In this document: positions 2 to 55,699 of the stretch, piece by piece | Layout of the letters: each line of letters starts with the position of its first letter | Numbering within the stretch: position 1 is the stretch's first letter | IMG/VR virus record: IMGVR_UViG_3300027816_000052 | Location: 1 to 64,000 of that record | Direction: 5' to 3' (one strand) | Length of the DNA stretch: 64,000 nt | Translations under genes and position numbers: made by a program | Notes under the pieces: generated by a model | The model's input: only the letters and a program-made list of their open reading frames with translations | Told to the model about the DNA's origin: nothing | Databases searched by the model: none

Positions 2-622
2 AAGAGAAGTTTTACATTTTCTCCGGGAGCATTTGCATCTTTTATAACATCATCATCAGGTGAAAGATTTGTTAAACATCTTAATAACAAATATGATGAG
101 ATTGTTGTTAATGGGGGTTTGGATTTAGAAAAAACACAAATTCAATCCTTACCGGATAATCTTCATGTTGAAGGGAGTATGTATTTAAATAGATGCAAAA
201 ATCTTCAATCCTTACCGGATAATCTTTATGTTGGGGGAAGTTTGGATTTAGGTTATACACCAATTCAATCCTTACCGGATAATCTTTATTTTGAAAAAGA
301 TTTGGATTTAGGAGGAACACCAATTCAATCCTTACCTGATAATCTTTATGTTGAAGGGAGTATGTATTTAAATAGATGCAAAAATCTTCAATCCTTACCG
401 GATAATCTTTATGTTGGGGGATATTTGAATTTACATGAAACACAAATTCAATCCTTACCGGATAATCTTTATGTTGGGGGATATCTAAATTTAGATAAAA
501 CACCAATTCAATCCTTGCCGGATAATCTTGATGTTAAAGGGGTAATTTATATTCGTGGAACACCATTAAAAGATAATGATGAATTGGTTGCGAAATATAG
601 GAAAAAATATAGGATTTTATAG
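2..622 (+). CDS. LRR-like repeat protein, 5'-truncated by the window edge
   Basis: 20/21-aa repeats IQSLPDNLxVxGxLxLxxT. The frame is open back to position 2, and nt 1-118 closely match the 5' part of paralog 42879..43697. Confidence 0.85.
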   Translation, partial: KRSFTFSPGAFASFITSSSGERFVKHLNNKYDEIVVNGGLDLEKTQIQSLPDNLHVEGSMYLNRCKNLQSLPDNLYVGGSLDLGYTPIQSLPDNLYFEKDLDLGGTPIQSLPDNLYVEGSMYLNRCKNLQSLPDNLYVGGYLNLHETQIQSLPDNLYVGGYLNLDKTPIQSLPDNLDVKGVIYIRGTPLKDNDELVAKYRKKYRIL

Positions 623-634
623 AACTTTTTAATT

Positions 635-1114
635 ATGAAAAAGATTAAATTAACAGAATCCGACCTTTATAATATTATAGAGCGAGTTCTTCTTGAGCAA
701 GAGGAAAATAATAAACGTGTTTGGAATACAACTCCAGAACGTTTTATTATGGTTCTTAATAATGTTTTTAATGGAAATTCTGAAATGTTCAGAAAAATTC
801 TTAATAAAAAATATGATAACATTATTATTAATGAAGATTTGGATTTGAGTGAATCACGAATTAAAACCTTACCTGATAATCTTAAAGTTAAAGGTTATCT
901 TAATTTAAATTATACAAAAATAGAATCCTTACCGGATAATCTTCATGTTGAGGGGAATTTGTATTTAGCTTTTACACGAATTTATTCTTTACCGGATAAT
1001 CTTCGTGTTGGAGGTAAAATCTATATTCATGGAACACTATTAGTTAGAAATAGTGATTTAGTTGCGGAATATAGAAACAAACATAAAATTGAAGGATATT
1101 TTTGGTCATCATGA
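635..1114 (+). CDS. LRR-like repeat protein with MKKIKLTESDL leader
   Basis: Three LPDNLxVxGxLxL repeats; N-terminus shared with 26441..27148 and 42879..43697. Confidence 0.85.
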   Translation: MKKIKLTESDLYNIIERVLLEQEENNKRVWNTTPERFIMVLNNVFNGNSEMFRKILNKKYDNIIINEDLDLSESRIKTLPDNLKVKGYLNLNYTKIESLPDNLHVEGNLYLAFTRIYSLPDNLRVGGKIYIHGTLLVRNSDLVAEYRNKHKIEGYFWSS

Positions 1115-11200: not shown

Positions 11201-13555
11201 ATGCCAAAATTTTTAAAAGAAATAACATTTAGTGGTCAATCAACACCATCAATACCAGATCCCGGTTATGGTTCATTATATATTGATGGATTAACTAATT
11301 TATTATATTATATTGATGATGCTGGTGTTACATATAACTTAACGTCAGGTGGAACAGATACTTATGCTACAGGTTTTACATACAATAATGCAAATACGTT
11401 AACAATTCAACAAAATAACGCTCAACCTGATTTAACCGCATCAATAAACGTAATGACCGGATTAACAGTTAATGGTAACTTATCAGCAACAACAATTGAC
11501 ACTGAATATATTGATTTCTTACCACTAACCGCTAGACCAGCACATTCAGAAGCAAGAATTTATTGGTATGATGATGAAAATACCCTTGAACTTCAAACAG
11601 AAAATAATGATTTTAATATTGAAGTTGGTCATCAAACCGTTGTTAGAGTTAGAAATACAACCGGTGGTCCCTTAACAAAAGGGAGACTTGTCTACATTAA
11701 TGGTGGTTCAGGAAATAATCCGACAGTAACTTTAGCAAGTTATGAAAATGATTTAAATAGTGCAAGAACATTAGGTTTTCTTGGTACAAATATAAATGAT
11801 AATCAATTTGGATACGTAATTACAAATGGTATGTTACGTAATGTGAATACCTCAGCTTATTCTACTGGTACACAGTTATATCTATGGTCTGCTGGTACAT
11901 ATTCAAATCAAATTCCCGAAGCACCATTACACGAAGTAAGAGTTGGTATCGTAATTAGACAAAGTGCAACTGTTGGTATTATTTTCGTTGCAATAATGAA
12001 TGGTTATGAGTTAGGTGAACTTCACGATGTTTTAATTTCTGGTTTAACAAATAACGATTTATTACATTATAATTCCTCATTAAGTGCTTGGACTAATACA
12101 CAAAATATACAAATAAATTCTATTTCAGCAACAACTTATCAGAATTTACCAACTGATATTAGAGTAACTGGTGGAACATATTCTGATGGTTCTGCAACAT
12201 TTACAAATAATACTGGGGGAACATTTACTGTTAGTGGATTCCAAAATTGGAAATGGTATGCTGAAAATACAACTGCACCAATTGTTCCCCCACAAGCAAA
12301 CGGAAGTGGTTCAATTGCATTAGGTGATAATGCTTGTGCTAGAGGTGATAATATGTTTGTTTATGGTAACTGTGCTGGTATTGGTTCAGTTGTTACAGAT
12401 AATTCAAATTTCTTAGGTCATAATGCAGGAACAAATTCAGCATATGGATTTAGTTCAAATTTCTTTGGTTGTAAAGCTGGTAAAGATGCTACATTAGCTA
12501 ATAATTCAAATTTCTTAGGAGAAAATGCAGGTAATTTAGCAACAAATGCTGATAATTCAAATTTCTTAGGTACAAACTCAGGTTATTTAGCTACATCAGC
12601 TTGTCATTCTAACTTTATTGGTCGTAATGCTGGTTGTAACGCAAAAGGTGCAAATAATTCTAACTTTATTGGTGAAAATGCTGGACGTGAAGCTGATTTT
12701 GCAACTTATTCAAATTTATTTGGATATAATGCTGGTGCAACATTTGGTTCTAATGTTATTAAAGAAAATAATATTATTATTGGTACAAATATTTCATTAC
12801 CAAATGGTGCAATAAATTCATTAAATATTGGTGCTACAATATTTGGTACTGATTTATATGGTAATACAATTGGAGACCCCTCTATTACAGTTCAATCTTC
12901 AGGTAGAATCGGTATTGGTGTTCTTAATCCAACAACCACATTACACATATCAGGAGCAACCAATCCTTTAAGGATTGAGGGTTTATTAACATCGGCAAAT
13001 ACTGAATATCTTACAATCAGTCCAACAGGTGTTGTAACAAAAACATCCGGTGCAACTGGGGTTGATACATTTACAACGGGATTTACTTATTCAAGTAACA
13101 CGTTCTCAATTTTTAGAAATCAGGGACTCCCAAATCTAACTGCAACAATTAATTCTGTTACCGGATTAACATCTACAGGAACAATTTCATCAAGTATTAT
13201 TTCAGCAACAACTTATCAGAATTTACCATATGGTTTAGCTGGGATTAATAATCAAACAGTTACAGCATATACGTTTACTTTATTGGATTCTGGTTATTTA
13301 GTAACATTTAGTTCATCAACCTCTGTCCTAGCAACTATACCAACAAATATATCAGCACCGTTAGCAATTGGATCTCAAATTATGCTATCCCAACTTGGCT
13401 CCGGACAATTAAGAATTACTGGTGATACGGGTGTTACTTTATATTCTTACGGAAATGCATATAATTTAGTCGGACAATATTCTACAGCATTTTTAACTAA
13501 ACAAGGAACAAATACTTGGATTTTAGATGGAAATTTAACAACTTTAAATTTATAA
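11201..13555 (+). CDS. Putative tail fibre / receptor-binding protein
   Basis: DTYxTGFTY and ISATTYQNLP repeats; 14-aa NSNFLGxNAGxxA beta-roll repeats; RIGIG..NP...LHI motif. Confidence 0.7.
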   Translation: MPKFLKEITFSGQSTPSIPDPGYGSLYIDGLTNLLYYIDDAGVTYNLTSGGTDTYATGFTYNNANTLTIQQNNAQPDLTASINVMTGLTVNGNLSATTIDTEYIDFLPLTARPAHSEARIYWYDDENTLELQTENNDFNIEVGHQTVVRVRNTTGGPLTKGRLVYINGGSGNNPTVTLASYENDLNSARTLGFLGTNINDNQFGYVITNGMLRNVNTSAYSTGTQLYLWSAGTYSNQIPEAPLHEVRVGIVIRQSATVGIIFVAIMNGYELGELHDVLISGLTNNDLLHYNSSLSAWTNTQNIQINSISATTYQNLPTDIRVTGGTYSDGSATFTNNTGGTFTVSGFQNWKWYAENTTAPIVPPQANGSGSIALGDNACARGDNMFVYGNCAGIGSVVTDNSNFLGHNAGTNSAYGFSSNFFGCKAGKDATLANNSNFLGENAGNLATNADNSNFLGTNSGYLATSACHSNFIGRNAGCNAKGANNSNFIGENAGREADFATYSNLFGYNAGATFGSNVIKENNIIIGTNISLPNGAINSLNIGATIFGTDLYGNTIGDPSITVQSSGRIGIGVLNPTTTLHISGATNPLRIEGLLTSANTEYLTISPTGVVTKTSGATGVDTFTTGFTYSSNTFSIFRNQGLPNLTATINSVTGLTSTGTISSSIISATTYQNLPYGLAGINNQTVTAYTFTLLDSGYLVTFSSSTSVLATIPTNISAPLAIGSQIMLSQLGSGQLRITGDTGVTLYSYGNAYNLVGQYSTAFLTKQGTNTWILDGNLTTLNL

Positions 13556-18046: not shown

Positions 18047-18421
18047 TGGTGGAGATGGAGGGTTTCGAAACCCTCGTCTTCCGCTGTCAACCTAAAGAGA
18101 CTACACGCTTAGAACAACATTAGTTCTTAATGTTTCGAAATATCAAGTTTCACTATATACCAACTTGCAAAGGTTTTCTTTGGTTAATTTTAAGTATCAA
18201 CCACACTTTTTTTGGAATTTCTGTTGCTAGGTAAATTCCCAAATTACCCCTTGTAGGTGTTAGCCTTAGGCTACAGCTACTTCTTCAGTCTTGATGAGAC
18301 CCAAAACTGACATCTTGTCTAAAACGTTGCCGTTTACTTGTTTGAACCATTTTAACAAGGTTGATTCACCCTTGACGTGCCTATTTAACCTAATCATCGG
18401 AATCAAATCCAACTCATCCCC
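18047..18421 (-). ncRNA. ssrA: tmRNA, tag (A)GNVLDKMSVLGLIKTEEVAVA
   Basis: 5' GGGGATGAGTTGGATTTGATTCCG; 3' CGGAAGACGAGGG-TTTCGAAA-CCCTCCATCTCCACCA; G3:U70; tag frame 18331..18269 ending TAA. Confidence 0.93.
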
Positions 18422-31235: not shown

Positions 31236-31305
31236 TACTCCGTGAGAGATTCGAACTCTCAGCCTTCTCGTTAGGAGTGAGATGCTCATCCAGTTGAGAC
31301 GGGGC
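31236..31305 (-). tRNA. Degenerate tRNA-Arg(CCU)
   Basis: T-arm GAGAG-TTCGAAT-CTCTC and loop CTCCTAA present; nt 8-10 missing; C3xA70 mismatch. Confidence 0.6.
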
Positions 31306-39989: not shown

Positions 39990-40005
39990 TATTATTAATT
40001 TTTAG

Positions 40006-40079
40006 TTGTCCCACTCTGACTCGAACAGAGAACCTCCACATTATCAGTGTGACGATCTAACCAATTGATCTATGAGACA
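40006..40079 (-). tRNA. tRNA-Ile(GAU)
   Basis: TGTCTCA/TGGGACA; TCACA-CTGATAA-TGTGG. Confidence 0.92.
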
Positions 40080-40321
40080 ATAAGTGGTTATTTTATCGCT
40101 TTTATCCCTTGATCAGAGGGGAAGTGCTCGTAAAATAACCAAAACCAAACTTCAAATATCATTATATGTTCTATATAAAATTCGACAAAAGATAAACCCT
40201 AAAAAGCAACAAATCAAATTTATAATGGTAACATCATAAGATTGGGGATATAATATTTGTGTATATACACCAGCTAGGAATAAGGTAATGTAAGATAATA
40301 CTTTAAGTACGTGTTTCATTT

Positions 40322-40570
40322 TTATATAAAATAAGGTCCGTAGATAACACCCCCTGACTCAACAACACCCTTTTCCATTTCCCAAGCTTTTTTTAATGCT
40401 TCTTTAAGGGTATATACAGGACTAGCACCATTACCCCTAATTAACATGTGTGCGTGTTTGAAAACTCTTTTCTTTGAGATTTCTTTGGGAAAAATGATTA
40501 AGCTATTATCGCTATTTTTTTGATTTAAATAACGAGTTAACATTCCTTTTTTTGGTTCCATATCATTCAT
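40322..40570 (-). CDS. Hypothetical protein
   Basis: 82 aa; VFKHAH...EALKKAWEMEK motif. Confidence 0.6.
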   Translation of the reverse strand: MNDMEPKKGMLTRYLNQKNSDNSLIIFPKEISKKRVFKHAHMLIRGNGASPVYTLKEALKKAWEMEKGVVESGGVIYGPYFI

Positions 40571-40717
40571 TGTTTTTTTCTTTATCTTTAATTTCTTCTA
40601 TACGTCTGATGGTTGAGGGTTTAGTACATCTTCCACCGTAACCACAAAGATACGAAAGATTTCTGGTTTTTCTACGCACAATTTTACCTTGTTTACTCAT
40701 TTTGATTTTTTTATATG

Positions 40718-40789
40718 CGGTCTATGACGGGTTCGATCCGTCTACTCTACCGTGACAGGGTAGGATGATAGCCATTTCACCAATAGACC
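40718..40789 (-). tRNA. tRNA-Asp(GUC)
   Basis: GGTCTAT/ATAGACC; CTACC-CTGTCAC-GGTAG; T-loop ATCGAAC. Confidence 0.88.
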
Positions 40790-40800
40790 AAAAGAAATTG

Positions 40801-40872
40801 AGGACTCGGAGAATTACGATATCTCGACCTAAAAGTTAACAGCTTTTTGCTCTGCCCCTGAGCTACGAGTCC
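40801..40872 (-). tRNA. tRNA-Asn(GUU)
   Basis: GGACTCG/CGAGTCC; AAAAG-CTGTTAA-CTTTT; atypical T-arm. Confidence 0.82.
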
Positions 40873-40878
40873 TTATTG

Positions 40879-40951
40879 TGGTACTTCGTGGTTCCGAGCC
40901 ACGCTCCTCCCGTCTTCAGCGGGATGCTTTCACCAGATTAGCTTAAGTACC
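40879..40951 (-). tRNA. tRNA-Phe(GAA)
   Basis: GGTACTT/AAGTACC; TCCCG-CTGAAGA-CGGGA; T-loop CTCGGAA. Confidence 0.85.
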
Positions 40952-41006
40952 GTTATCAGTTACAAAACCTCTCAAATTAGGAACTTCACCGATGTAGTTT
41001 TTTTAG

Positions 41007-41090
41007 TGGAAGTAGTAAGACTCGAACTTACGAACCCCTTTCGGAGAAGTGATTTACAGTCACTTGGAATTGCCGCTATCCGATACTTCC
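41007..41090 (-). tRNA. tRNA-Tyr(GUA)
   Basis: GGAAGTA/TACTTCC; AGTGA-CTGTAAA-TCACT; long variable arm. Confidence 0.92.
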
Positions 41091-41094
41091 ATTT

Positions 41095-41158
41095 GCTGTC
41101 TCTCCATGCTGTCAATGCGGATGTTTTATCATGAATTTAGGTACCTCGCATTGCTCCC
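41095..41158 (-). ncRNA. Small RNA with TGACAG-N3-GGAGAGAC motif (copy 1)
   Basis: CAATGCG/CGCATTG stem followed by a motif shared with 42034..42103. Confidence 0.55.
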
Positions 41159-41164
41159 ATATTG

Positions 41165-41236
41165 TAGTCCCGACGAGAATCGAACTCGCATTACCGGAGT
41201 GAAAATCCGGGTTCCGAACCATTAGAAGACGGGACC
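41165..41236 (-). tRNA. tRNA-Glu(UUC)
   Basis: GGTCCCG/CGGGACT; CCGGA-TTTTCAC-TCCGG. Confidence 0.9.
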
Positions 41237-41260
41237 ATTTAAAATTTTAATGAACTAAAG

Positions 41261-41334
41261 CTGTCCCGGAAGGGGTCGAACCTTCAAACTTCCCCTTCAA
41301 AGGGGGATGACTTTGCCAATTTGTCTACAGGACA
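41261..41334 (-). tRNA. tRNA-Gln(UUG)
   Basis: TGTCCTG/CGGGACA; TCCCC-CTTTGAA-GGGGA; G73. Confidence 0.9.
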
Positions 41335-41339
41335 ATAAG

Positions 41340-41473
41340 CGGGGGAGGTTGGATTCGCACCAACAATCGTTACATTTCAGAGTAATTGCTTTACTGTTTC
41401 GAAGTATCTCATATTCTCACCACTCGGACGAGGGAAAATGAAATGAGTTTTTCTTTTTATTAGCTTCTCCCCC
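41340..41473 (-). ncRNA. tRNA-like RNA with large D-loop insertion and 8-nt anticodon loop
   Basis: GGGGGAG/CTCCCCC, GCT/AGC D-stem, TTAC/GTAA, GTTGG-TGCGAAT-CCAAC. Confidence 0.7.
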
Positions 41474-41485
41474 AAGAAATTATAG

Positions 41486-41568
41486 TGGATGTTGACGGAA
41501 TCGAACCGCGTTTCCAAACAGCACCCCCAACCTCATCATGAACGGTCGGTCAAGGTTTAGCAACACCC
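41486..41568 (-). ncRNA. tmRNA-TLD-like / Ala-acceptor tRNA-like RNA (83 nt)
   Basis: GGGTGTTG/CAACATCC with G3:U70, A73, T-loop TTCGATT, no D-stem. Confidence 0.7.
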
Positions 41569-41579
41569 AAAAAAGTTAG

Positions 41580-41653
41580 TTCTCCCAGCGAGACTCGAAC
41601 TCACAACTCCCATATTAAAAGTATGGTACTCTAACCAATTGAGTTACAGGAGA
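41580..41653 (-). tRNA. tRNA-Lys(UUU)
   Basis: TCTCCTG/TGGGAGA; CCATA-CTTTTAA-TATGG. Confidence 0.9.
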
Positions 41654-41658
41654 TTATG

Positions 41659-41792
41659 TGATGAGTGATGGATTCGAACCACCATAAGCTGCTTCGTTTA
41701 GGATATCCTCTAAGCAACAGCGGGATATGTATAGTGTTGGGTAACTATATCACTAATATCCACCGCAACCCGTTCCCTTGGGCTATCTCATC
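41659..41792 (-). ncRNA. tRNA-like RNA with extended anticodon and variable arms
   Basis: GATGAG/CTCATC, GCCC/GGGT D-stem, GGTGG-TTCGAAT-CCATC T-arm, no canonical anticodon loop. Confidence 0.7.
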
Positions 41793-41797
41793 AAATT

Positions 41798-41942
41798 GAG
41801 AGGACACCGATACCTCCTCTCTGGGTGGGTCTAATTTCGAATTCTTTTATGACTTGTTCTGAAAGTCGCCAACATACTCATCATTTCTGATTTAGTCATT
41901 GCACGTCCCACTTAACTTTAAACGCGGTCGGTTTTAAGGTAT
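41798..41942 (-). ncRNA. Candidate structured RNA downstream of tRNA-Pro
   Basis: GTGGG/CCCAC, GACTT/AAGTC, GAGAGGA/TCCTCTC, ATACCT/AGGTAT. Confidence 0.45.
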
Positions 41943-41950
41943 GTATTGTG

Positions 41951-42026
41951 TCGAGGTGAGAGGATTTGAACCTCCATGATATCTTCGCCCCAAACGAAGA
42001 GACTTAGCCAATTAGTCCACACCTCG
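41951..42026 (-). tRNA. tRNA-Pro(UGG)
   Basis: CGAGGTG/CACCTCG; CTTCG-TTTGGGG-CGAAG. Confidence 0.9.
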
Positions 42027-42033
42027 ATAATTA

Positions 42034-42103
42034 ATCGTCTCTCCGATCTGTCACACTTATTCATTGTTACGTCGATTGACACTAAGTGTTTAAATTCAAT
42101 CGA
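42034..42103 (-). ncRNA. Small pseudoknot RNA with TGACAG-N3-GGAGAGAC motif (copy 2)
   Basis: TCGATTGA/TCAATCGA stem, ACACTT/AAGTGT pseudoknot, ATCG-GAGAGA-CGAT hairpin. Confidence 0.6.
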
Positions 42104-42168
42104 ACATGATAATAATCAAATTATTATTATCTAAATTTCTTGGTATTACAATATGTCAACGAACGTCA

Positions 42169-42199
42169 CAAAGTTATGTCTTATTCTTCAAACTACCAA
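42169..42199 (-). promoter_or_regulatory. Bacteroidota-type promoter for the main tRNA/ncRNA operon
   Basis: TTG-N20-TAACTTTG. Confidence 0.75.
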
Positions 42200-42220
42200 A
42201 ACTTTTTTGGTATAAAATTT

Positions 42221-42247
42221 AAAACCCCGGATTTTTTGTCCGGGGTT
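42221..42247 (-). terminator. Intrinsic terminator
   Basis: AACCCCGGA-N7-TCCGGGGTT followed by U-rich sequence on the minus strand. Confidence 0.7.
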
Positions 42248-42414
42248 ACATTTTCTTTGTGTTAAAAATTATTTCACAAAAACCCCGGAATACATAATGG
42301 GAGCATAAAACCAATCACACTGATTTGGTTTTACTACCTCAAGATTATGTTTACGTAGATTGTTCATTTAAAATAATTTTCAATAAATATATACAAGTTT
42401 TGAAAAAAGTCAAA

Positions 42415-42819
42415 TCATTCTAATTTTTTTTCTAAATTTAAATAATCGATTGCTTTTTGTAATAATTTTACATCATCATTAAATCTACCCAAACCCAAGT
42501 TGCAGTTGTTGCATATATAACCCCTAAACGTATCAGTAAAATGACAATGATCTAAAACCCATGATGTTGTATGTTTATCACATATTGGACAATTTCCGGA
42601 TGGTGGTGGTGAATACTTAATTTTTAAATGTTTTCTTATTTCAGCTAATTTTTGATTGCAACTTTTGCATGTATTTTTTCTTCCAGCATCGATTGTTGAG
42701 AAGAATGGAAATTCGTCAATTTGTTTTTCAATATTGCAATTTCTGCATGTTTTTGTTTCTCCTGAAATAACTGGTTTTATGTTTTCTTCAGGTTCAAATA
42801 AATTTAATTGATTCATCAA
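42415..42819 (-). CDS. Endonuclease VII-like (His-Me) nuclease
   Basis: CPICD...VLDHCH...FRGYICNNCNLGLGRFNDD; N-terminal CxxC zinc motifs. Confidence 0.85.
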   Translation of the reverse strand: MMNQLNLFEPEENIKPVISGETKTCRNCNIEKQIDEFPFFSTIDAGRKNTCKSCNQKLAEIRKHLKIKYSPPPSGNCPICDKHTTSWVLDHCHFTDTFRGYICNNCNLGLGRFNDDVKLLQKAIDYLNLEKKLE

Positions 42820-42878
42820 ATTTTATTTGAACATAATGAGGTTCTGTGTTAAAGTAAACTATTCATATATTTATGGTT

Positions 42879-52558: not shown

Positions 52559-55500
52559 ATGGAAGATGAAAAACTAACAATATGGCAACGACTTTCTAAA
52601 GGATTTGGTCCAAACTCATTACTTGGACAAGAAAGTCCAACATTTAAATTTGATAAGAAGGTTTTATTAAAAACACCGAATAAGCAAGAGTACGAAAGAG
52701 AAAAACTCCAAGCACAACAAACAGCTTATTTAACATACCAATGGAGTAAGATTGAAAATAATTTATATACACAATCAGTATATTATGAACCCACTAGATT
52801 AGCATCATATTATGATTATGAGAGTATGGAATATTTTCCGGAAATTTCAGCAGCATTAGATACATTTTCGGAAGAATCTACAACGCCAAATCAAGATGGT
52901 CAAATGTTACAGATTTATTCTGAATCAAAAAGAATTAAATCAATTTTAACAGATTTATTCTATAATCAATTAGATATTAACACAAATCTACCCATGTGGA
53001 CAAGAAATACTTGTAAGTATGGTGATAATTTTGTGTTTTTAAAACTAGACCCAGAAAAAGGTATTGTTGGTTGTTTTCAACTACCAAATATTGAAATTGA
53101 ACGTATTGAAAAGGGGATGGTTAAACGTCCGGGTGGGACACCAAATAGCGACCCAGAAAATAAACAAATGAAATTCTCTTGGAAACAAAAAGATTTAGAT
53201 TTTAATACTTGGGAGGTCGCACATTTTAGATTATTGGGTGATGATAGAAAATTACCATACGGTACTTCGATGTTAGAAAAAGCGAGAAGAATTTGGAAAC
53301 AATTAGTTCTTGCTGAAGATGCAATGTTAATTTATAGAACATCTAGAGCACCGGAAAGAAGAGTATTTAAAGTTTTTGTTGGTAATATGGATGATAAAGA
53401 TGTTGAAGCATATGTGCAAAGATTTGCAAATAAATTTAAGCGAGACCAAGTAGCGGACCCAAAAACGGGTAATGTGGATTTACGTTTTAATCAAATGGCG
53501 GTAGACCAAGATTATTTTGTACCGGTTAGGGATATTGCTGCACCTAATCCGATTGATACATTACCGGGAGCGTGTATTGATTTAAATACCAGAATTCCCC
53601 TTCTTGATGGTAGAACTTTAACTTTACAACAAATAATTAATGAGTGGGATAATGGTAATAGAAACTTATGGGTTTATTCTTGTGACCCAAATACAGGGTC
53701 CGTACATCCGGGTATGGTAACTTGGGCTGGTGTAACAAGAAAAGACGCTGAAGTTATTAAAATTACATTAGACAATGGTGAAGAGGTGATTACAACTCCA
53801 GACCATAAATTTGTTCATAGAACTAGAGAATTTGTTGAAGCGAAAGATTTAATTGTTGGGGATAGTTTAATGCCTTTTTATTCAAGAACCGAAAAAATAA
53901 AGACCAACACTAATGATTATCACCAAATTTTTGATAATGAAAAAAATCAATGGGTTTTTACGCATAGAATGGTAAAAAACAGTACTGTTGGTAGTTCTTT
54001 AGTAAAAGAATGGGTTTTTAATTCTGAATTTAAAAATAAAGATAAAAAAATAATTCACCATAAAGACCATAATCGCTTTAATAATAATCCAAATAATTTA
54101 CTAATAATGAATGGTGAAGACCATTTAAAATATCACCAACATATCATAAAAGAAACGATTTGGAAAGATATTGAACTTAATAAGAAAAAAATTTCAGAAG
54201 GTATTAAAAATTATTTAAATAATCTTTCTTCAGATGAATTACAAAAAAGACATGAAAGAATTAATAATCCAATATCAAAAGCTAAAACAACTAAAAAGTT
54301 ATTGGAATGGAATAAAAATGATGAAAATTTAAAAAATAAAGGTAAAAAAATTTCAAAAGCTTATACAGAAGAAAGAAAAAATAAGATAAAGGAATTAAAT
54401 TTAATAAGGTGGTTGAATGATGATTATCGAAATAAAGTTTTTTCTAAAAAACAAACAATAACATTTGATGATTATATATATAATTCATTTGTTAGTGAAT
54501 TTAAAAAGACTTTACGTGCTGATTTAGCGTTAAAGAACTTAAATAATTCTTTTGAATTTATTTCACATTTTAAACAAATTAATGAGGAAATTAGAAGTTC
54601 GTTAACAAACTTAAATGAATTCACGCAAAACCATGTAGATAAAATGGTTAAACAACAAGGGTTTAAAAATTTTACTGAATGGAAACATTTTGAGTGTAAA
54701 AAGAGAGGATTTAAAAATATTCGTCAATGGAAATATAATGTTGAGAAAGAAATTTATTTTAACCATAAAATAACAAAAATTGAATGGTTAACAAATAAAA
54801 TTGACACTGGTACGATTACGGTTGATGGTAATGAATTATATTCAAAATCTCACACTTTTGCTATTGAAAGTGGTATTTTTATTAAAAATTCTAACCTTTC
54901 TGAAATTGCAGATATAGAATACATCCAGAAAAAACTTTTAACAGCATTAAGGATACCAAAAGCGTTCCTTGGGTTTGAAGAAGTTGTTGCTGATGGTAAA
55001 AATCTTGCGTTACAAGATATTCGTTTTGCTAGAACAATTAACAGAATACAAAAAAGTATGTTAGCGGAATTAAATAAAATTGCTATTATACATTTATTTA
55101 TTTTAGGTTTTGAAGATGAACTTTCTAACTTTACATTAGGATTAACAAACCCATCAACACAAGCTGATTTATTAAAGGTTGAGGTTTGGAAAGAGAAAAT
55201 CTTACTTTATAAAGACGCTGTTGCAGGAATTGAGGGTATTGCACCAACTTCACATTCTTGGGCTAAAAAACATATTCTTGGTTTCTCGGATGATGAAATT
55301 AAACTTGATATTCAACAACAAAGAATTGAAAAGGCGGTCGCAAAAGAACTTGAGAACACACCAAATGTGATTGTAAAAACAGGTATTTTTGATAGTGTTG
55401 ATGCAATCTACGGTCAAAAAGGTGGTGGTACTCAAGCTGGAACTCCCCCTCAAGAACCAACATCTGATATGACAATGCCTGAAACTAGTCCAGCATCATC

Positions 55501-55699
55501 ACCATCAATAACTCCACCAGAAGCTCCTGAGAGCGCACCAACTGAAACTCCAACAACAGTACCTGAATCAAAACAGGAAAGAGTAAATATTTTACTTGAA
55601 GGTGGTCTTTTAAATGAAGATGAAGAAATCGATTTGAGTAAAGCTAGAATTCAATTAGGTGAAATGGAAGAACATTTAAATAAACTTCTAAAGTCGTGA
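52559..55699 (+). CDS. gp20: Portal protein (T4 gp20-like) containing an intein
   Basis: YPEISAALD, MLIYRTSRAPERRVF, DYFVP, IDTLPGA|...|SNLSEIADIEYIQKKL. Confidence 0.92.
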   Translation: MEDEKLTIWQRLSKGFGPNSLLGQESPTFKFDKKVLLKTPNKQEYEREKLQAQQTAYLTYQWSKIENNLYTQSVYYEPTRLASYYDYESMEYFPEISAALDTFSEESTTPNQDGQMLQIYSESKRIKSILTDLFYNQLDINTNLPMWTRNTCKYGDNFVFLKLDPEKGIVGCFQLPNIEIERIEKGMVKRPGGTPNSDPENKQMKFSWKQKDLDFNTWEVAHFRLLGDDRKLPYGTSMLEKARRIWKQLVLAEDAMLIYRTSRAPERRVFKVFVGNMDDKDVEAYVQRFANKFKRDQVADPKTGNVDLRFNQMAVDQDYFVPVRDIAAPNPIDTLPGACIDLNTRIPLLDGRTLTLQQIINEWDNGNRNLWVYSCDPNTGSVHPGMVTWAGVTRKDAEVIKITLDNGEEVITTPDHKFVHRTREFVEAKDLIVGDSLMPFYSRTEKIKTNTNDYHQIFDNEKNQWVFTHRMVKNSTVGSSLVKEWVFNSEFKNKDKKIIHHKDHNRFNNNPNNLLIMNGEDHLKYHQHIIKETIWKDIELNKKKISEGIKNYLNNLSSDELQKRHERINNPISKAKTTKKLLEWNKNDENLKNKGKKISKAYTEERKNKIKELNLIRWLNDDYRNKVFSKKQTITFDDYIYNSFVSEFKKTLRADLALKNLNNSFEFISHFKQINEEIRSSLTNLNEFTQNHVDKMVKQQGFKNFTEWKHFECKKRGFKNIRQWKYNVEKEIYFNHKITKIEWLTNKIDTGTITVDGNELYSKSHTFAIESGIFIKNSNLSEIADIEYIQKKLLTALRIPKAFLGFEEVVADGKNLALQDIRFARTINRIQKSMLAELNKIAIIHLFILGFEDELSNFTLGLTNPSTQADLLKVEVWKEKILLYKDAVAGIEGIAPTSHSWAKKHILGFSDDEIKLDIQQQRIEKAVAKELENTPNVIVKTGIFDSVDAIYGQKGGGTQAGTPPQEPTSDMTMPETSPASSPSITPPEAPESAPTETPTTVPESKQERVNILLEGGLLNEDEEIDLSKARIQLGEMEEHLNKLLKS
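53573..54889 (+). mobile_element. Intein (439 aa) with HNH homing endonuclease
   Basis: CIDLNTRIPLLDG, TTPDHKF block B, WVFTHR...IHHKDHNRFNNNPNNL, HTFAIESGIFIKN|S. Confidence 0.9.

What the first reader, a model, noticed from the sequence alone, without database searches (positions are those of the whole stretch)
41659..41792. 134-nt tRNA-like RNA with greatly extended anticodon and variable arms
Seen: acceptor GATGAG/CTCATC with A73, D-arm GCCC-AAGGGAAC-GGGT, canonical T-arm GGTGG-TTCGAAT-CCATC. The anticodon arm is a long irregular helix (GCGG/CCGC, GATAT/ATATC, TATAGT/ACTATA) capped by TACCCAAC. The variable arm is also long (GTTGCTT/AAGCAGC enclosing AGGA/TCCT). I could not excise a segment that restores a canonical U33 loop. 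Inference: the elbow and acceptor are kept for RNase P and CCA processing, while the arms carry another function (protein binding, decoy, tRNA-like regulatory RNA).
Basis: partly seen in the sequence, partly recalled or inferred. Interest (0 to 1): 0.7.

Follow-up and report, generated by a model that had tools for sequence, protein, structure and literature searches.

The report
Phage tRNA-like RNA without an anticodon
This is a real, conserved tRNA-shaped RNA gene in the tRNA cluster of a giant phage; it keeps every part a cell uses to recognise and trim a tRNA but has no usable anticodon, so it is probably a tRNA mimic, not a decoder, and its role is unknown.

Summary
It has a 6-7 bp acceptor stem with A73, a D arm, a canonical T arm, a long hairpin in the anticodon position and a 31-nt variable arm. 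It lies 5 nt from tRNA-Lys in the tRNA array of a 256-kb metagenomic jumbo phage.

ARAGORN misses it. Rfam's tRNA model scores it below threshold (20.6 bits, cut-off 29). No single excision gives a canonical anticodon arm.

I found four diverged homologues. One is a 113-nt copy in a ~90% relative. Three are 106-nt copies in otherwise unrelated phage tRNA arrays. Across the five sequences 97% of modelled pair cells are paired, and 12 pairs show changes on both sides, in the acceptor stem, the basal anticodon stem and the base of the variable arm. The D arm and T arm are invariant. A7·A66 (A·G in one copy) and A73 recur.

None of the five has an ordinary 5-bp stem with a 7-nt U33 loop. The window's extra length comes from a 21-nt apical hairpin that one near-identical relative lacks.

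Metatranscriptome contigs cover the array unspliced.

Verdict: a new, small family of non-decoding tRNA-like RNAs. A role as a decoy or mimic is inferred, not shown.

The parts
41659..41792 (-). The whole 134-nt tRNA-like RNA gene (RNA position p = 41793 minus the window coordinate)
   Evidence: Sequence. Rfam tRNA 20.6 bits, full-length with a 75-nt insert. Cloverleaf MFE. Model R2, built from other phages, scores it 62 bits.
41786..41792 (-). Acceptor stem 5' strand GAUGAGA. The first 6 nt pair; A7 faces A66.
   Evidence: Four of 6 pairs show changes on both sides across the 5 homologues. A7·A66 is kept in 4 of 5 and is A·G in L126.
41659..41666 (-). Acceptor stem 3' strand ACUCAUC plus discriminator A73. 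The next base is C and no CCA is encoded.
   Evidence: most tRNAs of this array likewise end in a discriminator followed by C. A73 is invariant in all 5 homologues.
41768..41783 (-). D arm GCCC-AAGGGAAC-GGGU
   Evidence: UAGCCCAAGGGAACGGG is invariant in all 5 homologues. This is partly a consequence of the search pattern used to find them.
41720..41766 (-). Hairpin in the anticodon position (47 nt). The basal stem is GCGG/CCGC, followed by an AU-rich extension.
   Evidence: The basal stem covaries across the family: GAGCG/UGCUU, GGGCG/UGCCU, GACAG/UUGUU. There is no U33-type loop, and no single excision restores one.
41729..41749 (-). Apical 21-nt hairpin (UAUAGU-UACCCAAC-ACUAUA-C): a lineage-specific, dispensable extension
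   Evidence: Absent from the 113-nt copy in L126. Apparently present in the run X20 relative, whose contig piece shows 2 gaps against 24 in X21. Not repeated elsewhere in the genome.
41688..41718 (-). Variable arm (31 nt): 7-bp stem, asymmetric internal loop (AG / AAACG), and an inner AGG-AUAU-CCU hairpin
   Evidence: Identical in L126. The basal 4 bp covary in the 106-nt homologues, which keep the same stem / A-rich internal loop / small hairpin layout.
41667..41687 (-). UUAU linker and T arm GGUGG-UUCGAAU-CCAUC
   Evidence: CUUAUGGUGGUUCGAAUCCAU is invariant in all 5 homologues. The last U of the linker could pair with A66, which would give a 6/6 acceptor/T arrangement in place of the usual 7/5.
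41798..41821 (-). Upstream hairpin GAGAGGA-(10 nt)-UCCUCUC, 5 nt before the 5' end. It may or may not belong to the functional unit.
   Evidence: Kept in L126 with two compensatory pairs (G-C to A-U, A-U to U-A) although the spacer is only 86% identical. It cannot be present in L159, where only 3 nt separate the copy from the preceding tRNA; the upstream sequence of L143 and L144 was not examined.
41579..41653 (-). tRNA-Lys(UUU), 5 nt downstream: array context and the source of the 3' processing site
41950..42026 (-). tRNA-Pro(UGG), 157 nt upstream: array context

Best explanation
The element is a functional, non-decoding tRNA-like RNA. It belongs to a small family carried in phage tRNA arrays.

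Shown:
- It is co-transcribed with the array.
- It folds into a cloverleaf with an extra long (class II-like) variable arm.
- Selection keeps the acceptor stem, A73, the D/T elbow, the basal stem in the anticodon position and the variable arm.
- No member has a normal anticodon stem-loop.
- The window's extra 21-nt apical hairpin comes and goes between near-identical relatives.

Inferred:
- Because it looks like a tRNA from the acceptor end to the elbow, it is probably cut out by RNase P at the 5' end, and by the tRNA 3'-trimming and CCA-adding enzymes of the host at the 3' end. This would yield a stable RNA of about 137 nt.
- It cannot place an anticodon in the ribosome. Its job must therefore rest on the parts that are kept.
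- My preferred mechanism is a molecular mimic or decoy. The RNA would occupy a protein that recognises class II tRNAs by acceptor end, elbow and long variable arm, without reading the anticodon. Candidates are a host tRNA-targeting defence effector or a synthetase.
- Charging with an amino acid by an anticodon-independent synthetase is possible. It is not needed for this model.
For: Position and expression:
- It lies in the tRNA array on the same strand, 5 nt from tRNA-Lys, with the same 'discriminator + C' 3' context as its neighbours.
- Metatranscriptome contigs from 4 runs cover 40997-42250 without any joint. In run X11 the depth is about 45, against 0-4 in the flank 42323-42827.

Conservation in the close relative:
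- The ~90% relative L126 is 111/113 identical within the element, against 127/147 in the adjacent spacer (Fisher p = 5e-4) and 61/74 in tRNA-Lys.

Distant homologues:
- Three 106-nt copies (L143, L144, L159) lie in tRNA arrays on contigs that share nothing else with this phage.
- Among those three, 96.8% of pair cells are paired and 10 pairs change on both sides; 0 of 500 shuffles reach this, and slid controls give 35-52% paired.
- With all five sequences, 97.2% of cells are paired and 12 pairs change on both sides.
- Model R2, built without the window, finds the window element at 62 bits, against at most 28 bits for real tRNAs.

No decoding loop:
- No single deletion yields a canonical anticodon arm.
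- The hairpin in that position is about 20 bp of interrupted helix with an 8-nt loop (window), about 9 bp with a 7-nt loop (L126), or 5 bp with an invariant 13-nt loop that can extend to 8 bp with a 6-nt loop.

Background for the decoy idea:
- This phage carries a cREC-NUDIX-Rnl1 RNA-repair cassette, so RNA damage, possibly to tRNAs, is plausibly an issue for it.
Against: - No experiment or read-level data show the mature ends, CCA addition, stability, charging or any partner. The RNA evidence is assembled contigs, which drop rare spliced forms and hardly capture mature tRNA-sized RNAs.
- Only five distinct sequences from three lineages are known. Three of them were retrieved with a pattern that fixed part of the D loop and T loop, which inflates the apparent conservation of those parts.
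- The five-sequence alignment was fitted to the model.
- The 13-nt loop is invariant in the 106-nt subgroup but completely different in the window subgroup. A single shared function resting only on the conserved core does not explain this.
- The phage encodes no recognisable partner: I found no CCA-adding enzyme, class II synthetase core, FemAB or Ro/TROVE protein.
- The host is unknown, so no defence system can be named.
Confidence: 0.55

Rival explanations
1. It is a genuine decoding tRNA (a class II type with A73, such as Leu, or Arg as ARAGORN guesses). Its anticodon loop carries a short intervening sequence that is removed after transcription, for example by an endonuclease together with the phage's Rnl1-type ligase.
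For: - The phage lacks tRNA-Leu(UAA), Arg(UCU) and Ser(GCU).
- The 13-nt loop of the 106-nt homologues reads CUU-GUCUGA-AAGA. Removing 6 nt leaves CUUAAGA, a good Leu(UAA) loop, and the insertion then lies between positions 34 and 35. From my own knowledge, not checked here, the cyanobacterial tRNA-Leu group I intron lies at that position.
- With the threshold lowered, ARAGORN calls tRNA-Arg(CCU) with a 58-nt intron.
- Other long Leu-like tRNA genes with inserts of about 40 nt occur in related arrays.
- The phage has an Rnl1-family ligase.
Against: - For the window and L126 copies no single excision gives even 4 pairs plus U33 and R37. ARAGORN's model has only 3 standard pairs out of 5.
- Inserts of 6 to about 37 nt are far too small to self-splice, and no group I or II intron or ribozyme is found by Rfam.
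- The phage has no splicing endonuclease (EndA) and no RtcB.
- With several possible cut positions in a 13-nt loop, finding some canonical-looking loop is expected by chance (rough estimate of mine, not computed).
- RNA contigs show only the unspliced form.
- The one substitution in the arm between close relatives (G40A) would change the 'anticodon' of any loop reading.
Confidence: 0.1
2. It is charged with an amino acid by an anticodon-independent synthetase (LeuRS, SerRS or TyrRS, via A73 and the long variable arm). It then serves as an amino-acid carrier for a non-ribosomal reaction, or as a sink that alters the charging balance.
For: - A73 is invariant, the acceptor stem is intact and covaries, the shape is class II-like, and C11-G24 is present.
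- There are precedents for charged non-decoding tRNA-like RNAs. B. cereus tRNA-Other is cited in PMC5389517. Non-proteinogenic tRNA-Gly for Fem transferases is from my own knowledge.
Against: - No aminoacyl-tRNA transferase (FemAB) and no class II synthetase core is encoded by the phage.
- The identity rules of the unknown host cannot be checked.
- The D arm (4 bp with an 8-nt loop) is class I-like, unlike bacterial Leu, Ser and Tyr tRNAs (my knowledge).
- The variable arm (27-31 nt) is longer than any known class II arm (my knowledge).
Confidence: 0.15
3. It is a decaying tRNA pseudogene that has picked up hairpin insertions and has no function of its own. At most it serves as an RNase P/Z 'punctuation' signal in the polycistronic array transcript.
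For: - It sits in a fast-changing accessory array that close relatives lack altogether.
- The 21-nt indel shows the arm tolerates large changes.
- Odd, long tRNA-like genes are common in these arrays.
Against: - It is 98% identical where the adjacent spacer is 86% and tRNA-Lys is 82%.
- Compensatory changes maintain three helices in homologues from unrelated phages, including the non-tRNA variable-arm stem.
- At least L159 is packed 3 nt from the preceding tRNA, so nothing there needs extra punctuation.
Confidence: 0.1

Closest known systems
Canonical class II tRNAs (Leu, Ser, Tyr), Rfam RF00005
   Same: Acceptor stem, D arm with GG, T arm UUCGAAU, discriminator A73, a long extra arm between the anticodon arm and the T arm. 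It lies in a tRNA array and has tRNA-like spacing and 3' context.
   Different: No 5-bp stem with a 7-nt U33 anticodon loop in any of the five members. Below the Rfam cut-off (20.6 and 22.4 bits against 29). A conserved A7·A66 mismatch. A 4-nt linker after a 27-31-nt variable arm that contains an internal loop. A class I-type D arm.
Phage T4 species 1 RNA (rnaC, 139 nt) and species 2 RNA (rnaD): stable RNAs of unknown function in the T4 tRNA cluster
   Same: Made from a phage tRNA cluster. About 140 nt. Contains a perfect T arm and a tRNA-like 3' domain, with long extra helices. The function is still unknown (PMC3014915).
   Different: No sequence or model homology: R2 scores rnaC 10.3 bits, E 0.63. 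rnaC has a 45-nt 5' extension and an 8-bp acceptor-like stem. The present RNA is a complete cloverleaf starting at position +1.
tmRNA tRNA-like domain
   Same: Acceptor and T arm are kept while the anticodon arm is replaced. The phage also encodes a real tmRNA (18047-18421).
   Different: No G3·U70 (here U3-A70), no mRNA-like tag region and no pseudoknots. No Rfam tmRNA match was reported for the element, even at an E-value limit of 10.
Bacterial and phage Y RNA-like YrlA (tRNA-mimicking partner of Ro/Rsr)
   Same: A tRNA-mimicking non-coding RNA with a long helix where the anticodon stem would be. Known from phages.
   Different: In YrlA the RNA ends lie in the long stem and the acceptor is closed by a loop (my knowledge). 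Here the ends form the acceptor stem. No Rfam YrlA hit on the element. No TROVE protein in the phage.
allo-tRNAs and other irregular tRNAs (8/4, 9/3) and B. cereus tRNA-Other (PMC5389517)
   Same: Non-standard cloverleaves with long variable arms, found in bacteria and phage tRNA clusters. Some are proposed to be regulatory and not decoding.
   Different: Those keep a normal anticodon loop and have a lengthened acceptor stem with a shortened T stem. Here the acceptor and T stems together are 12 bp, as 7/5 with a mismatch or as 6/6, and the anticodon loop is missing.

Membership tests
tRNA (RF00005) | Score at or above the curated Rfam gathering threshold (29 bits) | tested here: not met
   20.6 bits for the window element. 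22.4 bits for L159; L143 and L144 are below E = 1.
tRNA (RF00005) | Cloverleaf with acceptor stem, D arm, T arm and the elbow-forming GG / UUCGAAU loops | tested here: met
   Helices are supported by covariation.
tRNA (RF00005) | A 5-bp anticodon stem with a 7-nt loop carrying U33 and a purine at 37 | tested here: not met
   Absent in all five homologues. ARAGORN at default settings makes no call.
Intron-containing tRNA | Removing one contiguous segment restores a canonical anticodon arm | tested here: not met
   Exhaustive enumeration gave 0 solutions. ARAGORN's low-threshold model has only 3 standard pairs out of 5.
Intron-containing tRNA | A splicing mechanism is available (group I/II ribozyme, or EndA plus ligase) | tested here: inconclusive
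   No ribozyme family in Rfam. No EndA or RtcB in the phage. An Rnl1-type ligase is present. Host enzymes are unknown.
Intron-containing tRNA | A spliced RNA form exists | tested here: inconclusive
   Four metatranscriptome runs show only the unspliced form and no joints. These are assembled contigs, which would miss small mature RNAs.
tmRNA | G3·U70, a tag-peptide reading frame and pseudoknots | tested here: not met
   The 3-70 pair is U-A. No Rfam tmRNA match was reported for the element even at an E-value limit of 10. At 134 nt it leaves no room for a tag region.
YrlA / bacterial Y RNA | Rfam RF02553 match; a Ro (TROVE) partner; RNA ends in the Ro-binding stem | tested here: not met
   No YrlA hit on the element. 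No TROVE protein in the phage. The RNA ends form the acceptor stem.
T4 rnaC (species 1 RNA) | Sequence and structure homology to T4 rnaC | tested here: not met
   R2 scores rnaC 10.3 bits, E 0.63. Only the generic T arm is shared.
The new family defined here (models R1 and R2) | Invariant UAGCCCAAGGGAACGGG and CUUAUGGUGGUUCGAAUCCAU; A7·A66; A73; two covarying hairpins between the D and T arms; located in a phage tRNA array | tested here: met
tRNA decoy against tRNA-targeting defence | Binds or is cut by a defence effector, and its presence rescues phage growth | not testable with these tools
   The only support is the analogy to variable-loop-cutting Septu and retron-Eco7 (PMC13096335) and the presence of an RNA-repair cassette.

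The most novel reading that the evidence does not exclude
Phage tRNA arrays carry a previously undescribed class of 'anticodon-less' tRNA mimics. This family is one well-defined example. It keeps a class II tRNA outline (acceptor end, elbow, long variable arm) and has moved between unrelated phages. It may work by titrating or mis-directing host proteins that recognise tRNAs without reading the anticodon, for instance variable-arm-directed defence nucleases or 3'-end-modifying toxins. If so, phage tRNA clusters would hold counter-defence RNAs as well as tRNAs, and this would suggest a role for the long-unexplained T4 species 1 RNA.
Probability: 0.25. Interest if true: 0.8.

Novelty: new variant of a known kind. 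Interest (0 to 1): 0.55.

Why it matters
Phage tRNA clusters are usually read as codon-usage helpers or as spare parts against tRNA-cleaving immunity. This element shows that such clusters also hold RNAs that are selected to look like a tRNA without being able to decode. The family has a defined, covarying fold and is shared by unrelated phages.

That makes a 50-year-old puzzle testable in a new system: what do stable tRNA-like RNAs from phage tRNA clusters do, T4 rnaC and rnaD among them? It also points to a blind spot in annotation. ARAGORN and Rfam both skip these genes, and several other long tRNA-like genes turned up in the few related arrays I inspected.

Tried and rejected
1. Simple intron. 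I enumerated every single deletion and found none that gives a canonical anticodon arm. ARAGORN's intron mode gives inconsistent identities across homologues (Arg-CCU, Thr-UGU, Arg-CCG, Asn-GUU).

2. Mobile palindromic insert. Neither arm nor the 21-nt hairpin recurs anywhere in the 256-kb genome.

3. Homologues in GenBank phages. Only T-loop-sized matches were found.

4. IMG/VR pattern scans. They returned only two identical copies (L002, L003). Two early scans used gap ranges that would have missed the shorter forms; searches corrected this.

5. Relatives found through the capsid protein and the 663-aa lysin-like protein, and through endonuclease VII. They lack the element, and the closest ones lack the whole array.

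6. Bacterial genomes (GTDB species representatives). The pattern hits there are ordinary tRNAs at 22-31 bits.

7. Partner genes in the phage. RtcB, EndA, CCA-adding enzyme, class II synthetase core, FemAB and TROVE are all absent.

8. Homology to T4 rnaC. Rejected.

9. The reading 'CUU-GUCUGA-AAGA = Leu(UAA) loop with a 6-nt insert'. I kept it only as a weak lead, because one of about eight possible excisions looking canonical is roughly what chance gives (rough estimate of mine, not computed).

10. Which of the two central hairpins is 'the anticodon arm' and which is 'the variable arm' cannot be settled from secondary structure. The 4-nt UUAU linker would also fit a class I tRNA with an extra arm inserted after position 26. 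Neither hairpin has an anticodon-type loop, so the conclusion does not change.

Full report
**Where it is.** The window is the first 64 kb of a 256,029-bp IMG/VR virus record. It encodes portal, major head, tail and lysin proteins, a protein with a type IX secretion CHU_C domain that hints at a Bacteroidota host, a tmRNA, and at least 22 tRNA genes, all within the first 42 kb. The finding lies on the minus strand, 41792 to 41659. It sits in the array Pro - X - Lys - (odd 86-nt RNA) - Gln - Glu - Tyr - Phe - Asn - Asp - Ile, 157 nt after tRNA-Pro and 5 nt before tRNA-Lys.

**Checking the observation.**
- RNAfold gives the same cloverleaf (-41.7 kcal/mol, z = -2.7).
- Rfam's tRNA model aligns end to end but must skip 75 nt, and scores 20.6 bits against a cut-off of 29.
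- ARAGORN at default settings is silent. With a lowered threshold it proposes tRNA-Arg(CCU) with a 58-nt intron, but that anticodon stem has only three standard pairs.
- I enumerated every single deletion that keeps the D and T arms. None gives five pairs, or four pairs plus U33 and a purine at 37.

**Expression.** Assembled contigs from four freshwater metatranscriptome runs cover the array as one unspliced stretch: 40997-42237, 41265-42250, 41549-42365 and 41692-41923. In run X11 the depth is about 45, against 0-4 in the flank 42323-42827, and there are no joints. The uneven depth argues for RNA and against contaminating DNA. These are contigs, however, so they show precursors and cannot exclude a small processed or spliced product.

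**Close relatives.**
- IMG/VR holds two identical copies, which carry no information.
- Phages related through the capsid protein, the 663-aa lysin-like protein or the neighbouring endonuclease VII lack the element. In the nearest ones endonuclease VII abuts the CHU_C gene directly, so the whole array 40005-42026 is an accessory insertion.
- Two DNA runs from 2025 hold a ~90% relative. I recovered one of its contigs (L126) through its endonuclease VII protein.
- In L126 the element is 113 nt long. It matches the window copy at 111 of 113 aligned positions. The adjacent spacer matches at 127/147 (Fisher p = 5e-4) and tRNA-Lys at 61/74.
- The two substitutions are G40A, in the internal loop of the anticodon-position arm, and A127G, at the A7·A66 mismatch.
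- The one large difference is that the apical 21 nt (41749-41729) are missing. That leaves a stem of about 9 bp with a 7-nt loop.
- The other 2025 run shares the same two substitutions, but its contig piece has only 2 gaps against 24. It therefore seems to keep the hairpin (inferred from gap counts).

So the core and the variable arm are under strong constraint, while the distal anticodon-position arm is variable.

**Distant homologues.** One scan of JGI metagenome contigs used a D-loop ... T-loop pattern and returned 21 loci.
- Model R1 recognised three of them as homologues of 106 nt: L159, L143 and L144, at 57, 49 and 48 bits.
- Each lies in a tRNA array. BLAST shows these contigs share nothing with the window phage except the two ends of the element.
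- In all five sequences UAGCCCAAGGGAACGGG, CUUAUGGUGGUUCGAAUCCAU and A73 are invariant. A7·A66 is kept in four and is A·G in L126.
- The 5-bp stem after the D arm covaries: GAGCG/UGCUU, GGGCG/UGCCU, GACAG/UUGUU.
- The acceptor stem covaries, and so does the basal 4 bp of the variable arm.
- Counts for the three sequences: 96.8% of pair cells paired, 10 pairs changed on both sides, 0 of 500 shuffles as high, slid controls 35-52% paired.
- Counts for all five: 97.2% paired and 12 pairs changed on both sides. This alignment was fitted to the model.
- Model R2, built from the three 106-nt copies alone, finds the window element at 62 bits and L126 at 64.5 bits. Every real tRNA in about 480 kb of phage loci scores at most 28 bits.
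- No member occurs among GTDB species-representative genomes.
- Rfam has no family for these RNAs.

**What the family looks like.**
- Acceptor stem of 6 pairs followed by A·A. The U before the T stem could pair with A66, which would give a 6/6 acceptor/T arrangement.
- A 4-bp D stem with an 8-nt loop.
- Hairpin 1: a 5-bp covarying stem. In the 106-nt group it carries an invariant 13-nt loop, CUUGUCUGAAAGA, which can extend the helix to 8 bp with a 6-nt loop. In the window group it continues as an AU-rich extension.
- One U.
- Hairpin 2, the 'variable arm' (27-31 nt): a basal stem, an asymmetric A-rich internal loop and a small apical hairpin.
- The UUAU linker.
- A canonical T arm.
- A73, with no encoded CCA.

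No member has a 7-nt U33 loop on a 5-bp stem.

**Interpretation.**

Shown:
- It is a conserved, transcribed, tRNA-shaped RNA without a decoding loop.
- The variable arm is a family trait.
- The window's extra-long arm is a lineage-specific add-on.

Inferred:
- It is matured by RNase P and the 3'-end/CCA machinery. This rests on its tRNA-like spacing and on the same 'discriminator + C' context as the neighbouring tRNAs.
- It acts through the acceptor end, the elbow and the variable arm. The model I favour is a mimic or decoy for a protein that recognises class II tRNAs without reading the anticodon.
- Two pieces of background make this plausible. [quoted passage not shown] This phage also carries a cREC-NUDIX-Rnl1 RNA-repair cassette (the cREC-ligase linkage is described in PMC7824862).

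Nothing ties this RNA to any particular effector. Charging by LeuRS or SerRS is possible but unsupported, because no partner enzymes are encoded by the phage.

**Rivals.**
- A spliced decoding tRNA is unlikely. No excision works for the window group, the inserts are too short to self-splice, the phage has no EndA or RtcB, and no spliced form was seen.
- The reading CUU-GUCUGA-AAGA as a Leu(UAA) loop, together with the missing Leu(UAA) gene, keeps that idea alive at about 0.1.
- A pseudogene is contradicted by the conservation contrast and by the compensatory changes.

**Comparison with known RNAs.** The nearest concept is phage T4 species 1 RNA (rnaC). It is also about 140 nt, comes from a tRNA cluster, carries a perfect T arm, and still has no known function (PMC3014915). 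It is not homologous (10.3 bits). tmRNA, YrlA, allo-tRNAs and tRNA-Other share single traits but fail their defining features; see the membership table.

**Limits.** There are only five sequences from three lineages. Three of them were retrieved with a pattern that fixes 22 core bases. The host is unknown, and there are no read-level RNA ends.

Noticed in passing
window 41483-41568 (-): A second non-canonical tRNA-like gene of 86 nt. It has an 8-bp acceptor stem with a 4-bp T stem (an 8/4, allo-tRNA or Sec-like shape) and a 6-bp stem with an 11-nt loop GUUCAUGAUGA. ARAGORN misses it and Rfam gives only a 13.6-bit tmRNA match. The L126 homologue keeps it at 81/86 identity, with a compensatory T-stem change (C-G to U-A) and a G·U to G-C change.
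   Followed up: partly
window 41798-41821 (-): A hairpin (7-bp stem, 10-nt loop) lies 5 nt upstream of the element. It is preserved in L126 by two compensatory pair changes, although the spacer is only 86% identical. It could be a processing or regulatory signal, or part of a small RNA released between tRNA-Pro and the element.
   Followed up: partly
G000 (same genome) about 227582-229469, locus L182:552-2439: Three adjacent genes encode a cREC (cyclic-phosphate processing receiver) domain protein, a NUDIX hydrolase and an Rnl1-family RNA ligase. This is a predicted RNA-repair cassette.
   Followed up: partly
L120:1501-1604(-); L084:1009-1129, 811-935, 593-690 (-); L126:2205-2325(+); L161:10234-10335 and 11558-11677 (+): Other long (about 100-125 nt) tRNA-like genes occur in the tRNA arrays of related freshwater jumbo phages. 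They have good acceptor, D and T arms but long hairpins or inserts of about 40 nt in place of the anticodon loop. Some have a Leu-type D arm and one carries two T arms. They are not homologous to this family (R1 and R2 scores at most 28 bits). The phenomenon looks common and is not annotated.
   Followed up: partly
window 40005-42026 versus loci L132-L142: Close relatives have endonuclease VII directly next to the CHU_C-domain gene. This half of the tRNA array is therefore an accessory insertion. In the L126 and X20 relatives it is further rearranged, with inserts of 600-1500 nt that include an HNH gene.
   Followed up: partly
window 18047-18421 (-): The phage encodes a full-length tmRNA (Rfam 100.4 bits). 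A relative (L121) also has one, with the tag peptide GETFAKLQTIGLIRTADVTVA.
   Followed up: no
window 31236-31305 (-): A 70-nt tRNA found only by Rfam, at exactly the threshold (29.3 bits). It has a CUCCUAA (Arg-CCU-like) loop and a shortened 5' part, and ARAGORN does not call it.
   Followed up: no
window 52559-55699 (+): The portal protein ORF is 1046 aa long and has HNH endonuclease matches at residues about 448-579, inside the portal homology. This suggests an inserted intein or homing-endonuclease domain.
   Followed up: no
window 42223-42247: A perfect 10-bp GC-rich palindrome with T-runs on both strands, resembling a bidirectional terminator, lies between endonuclease VII and the tRNA array. 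Two RNA contigs end within it or a few bases beyond (42237 and 42250).
   Followed up: no
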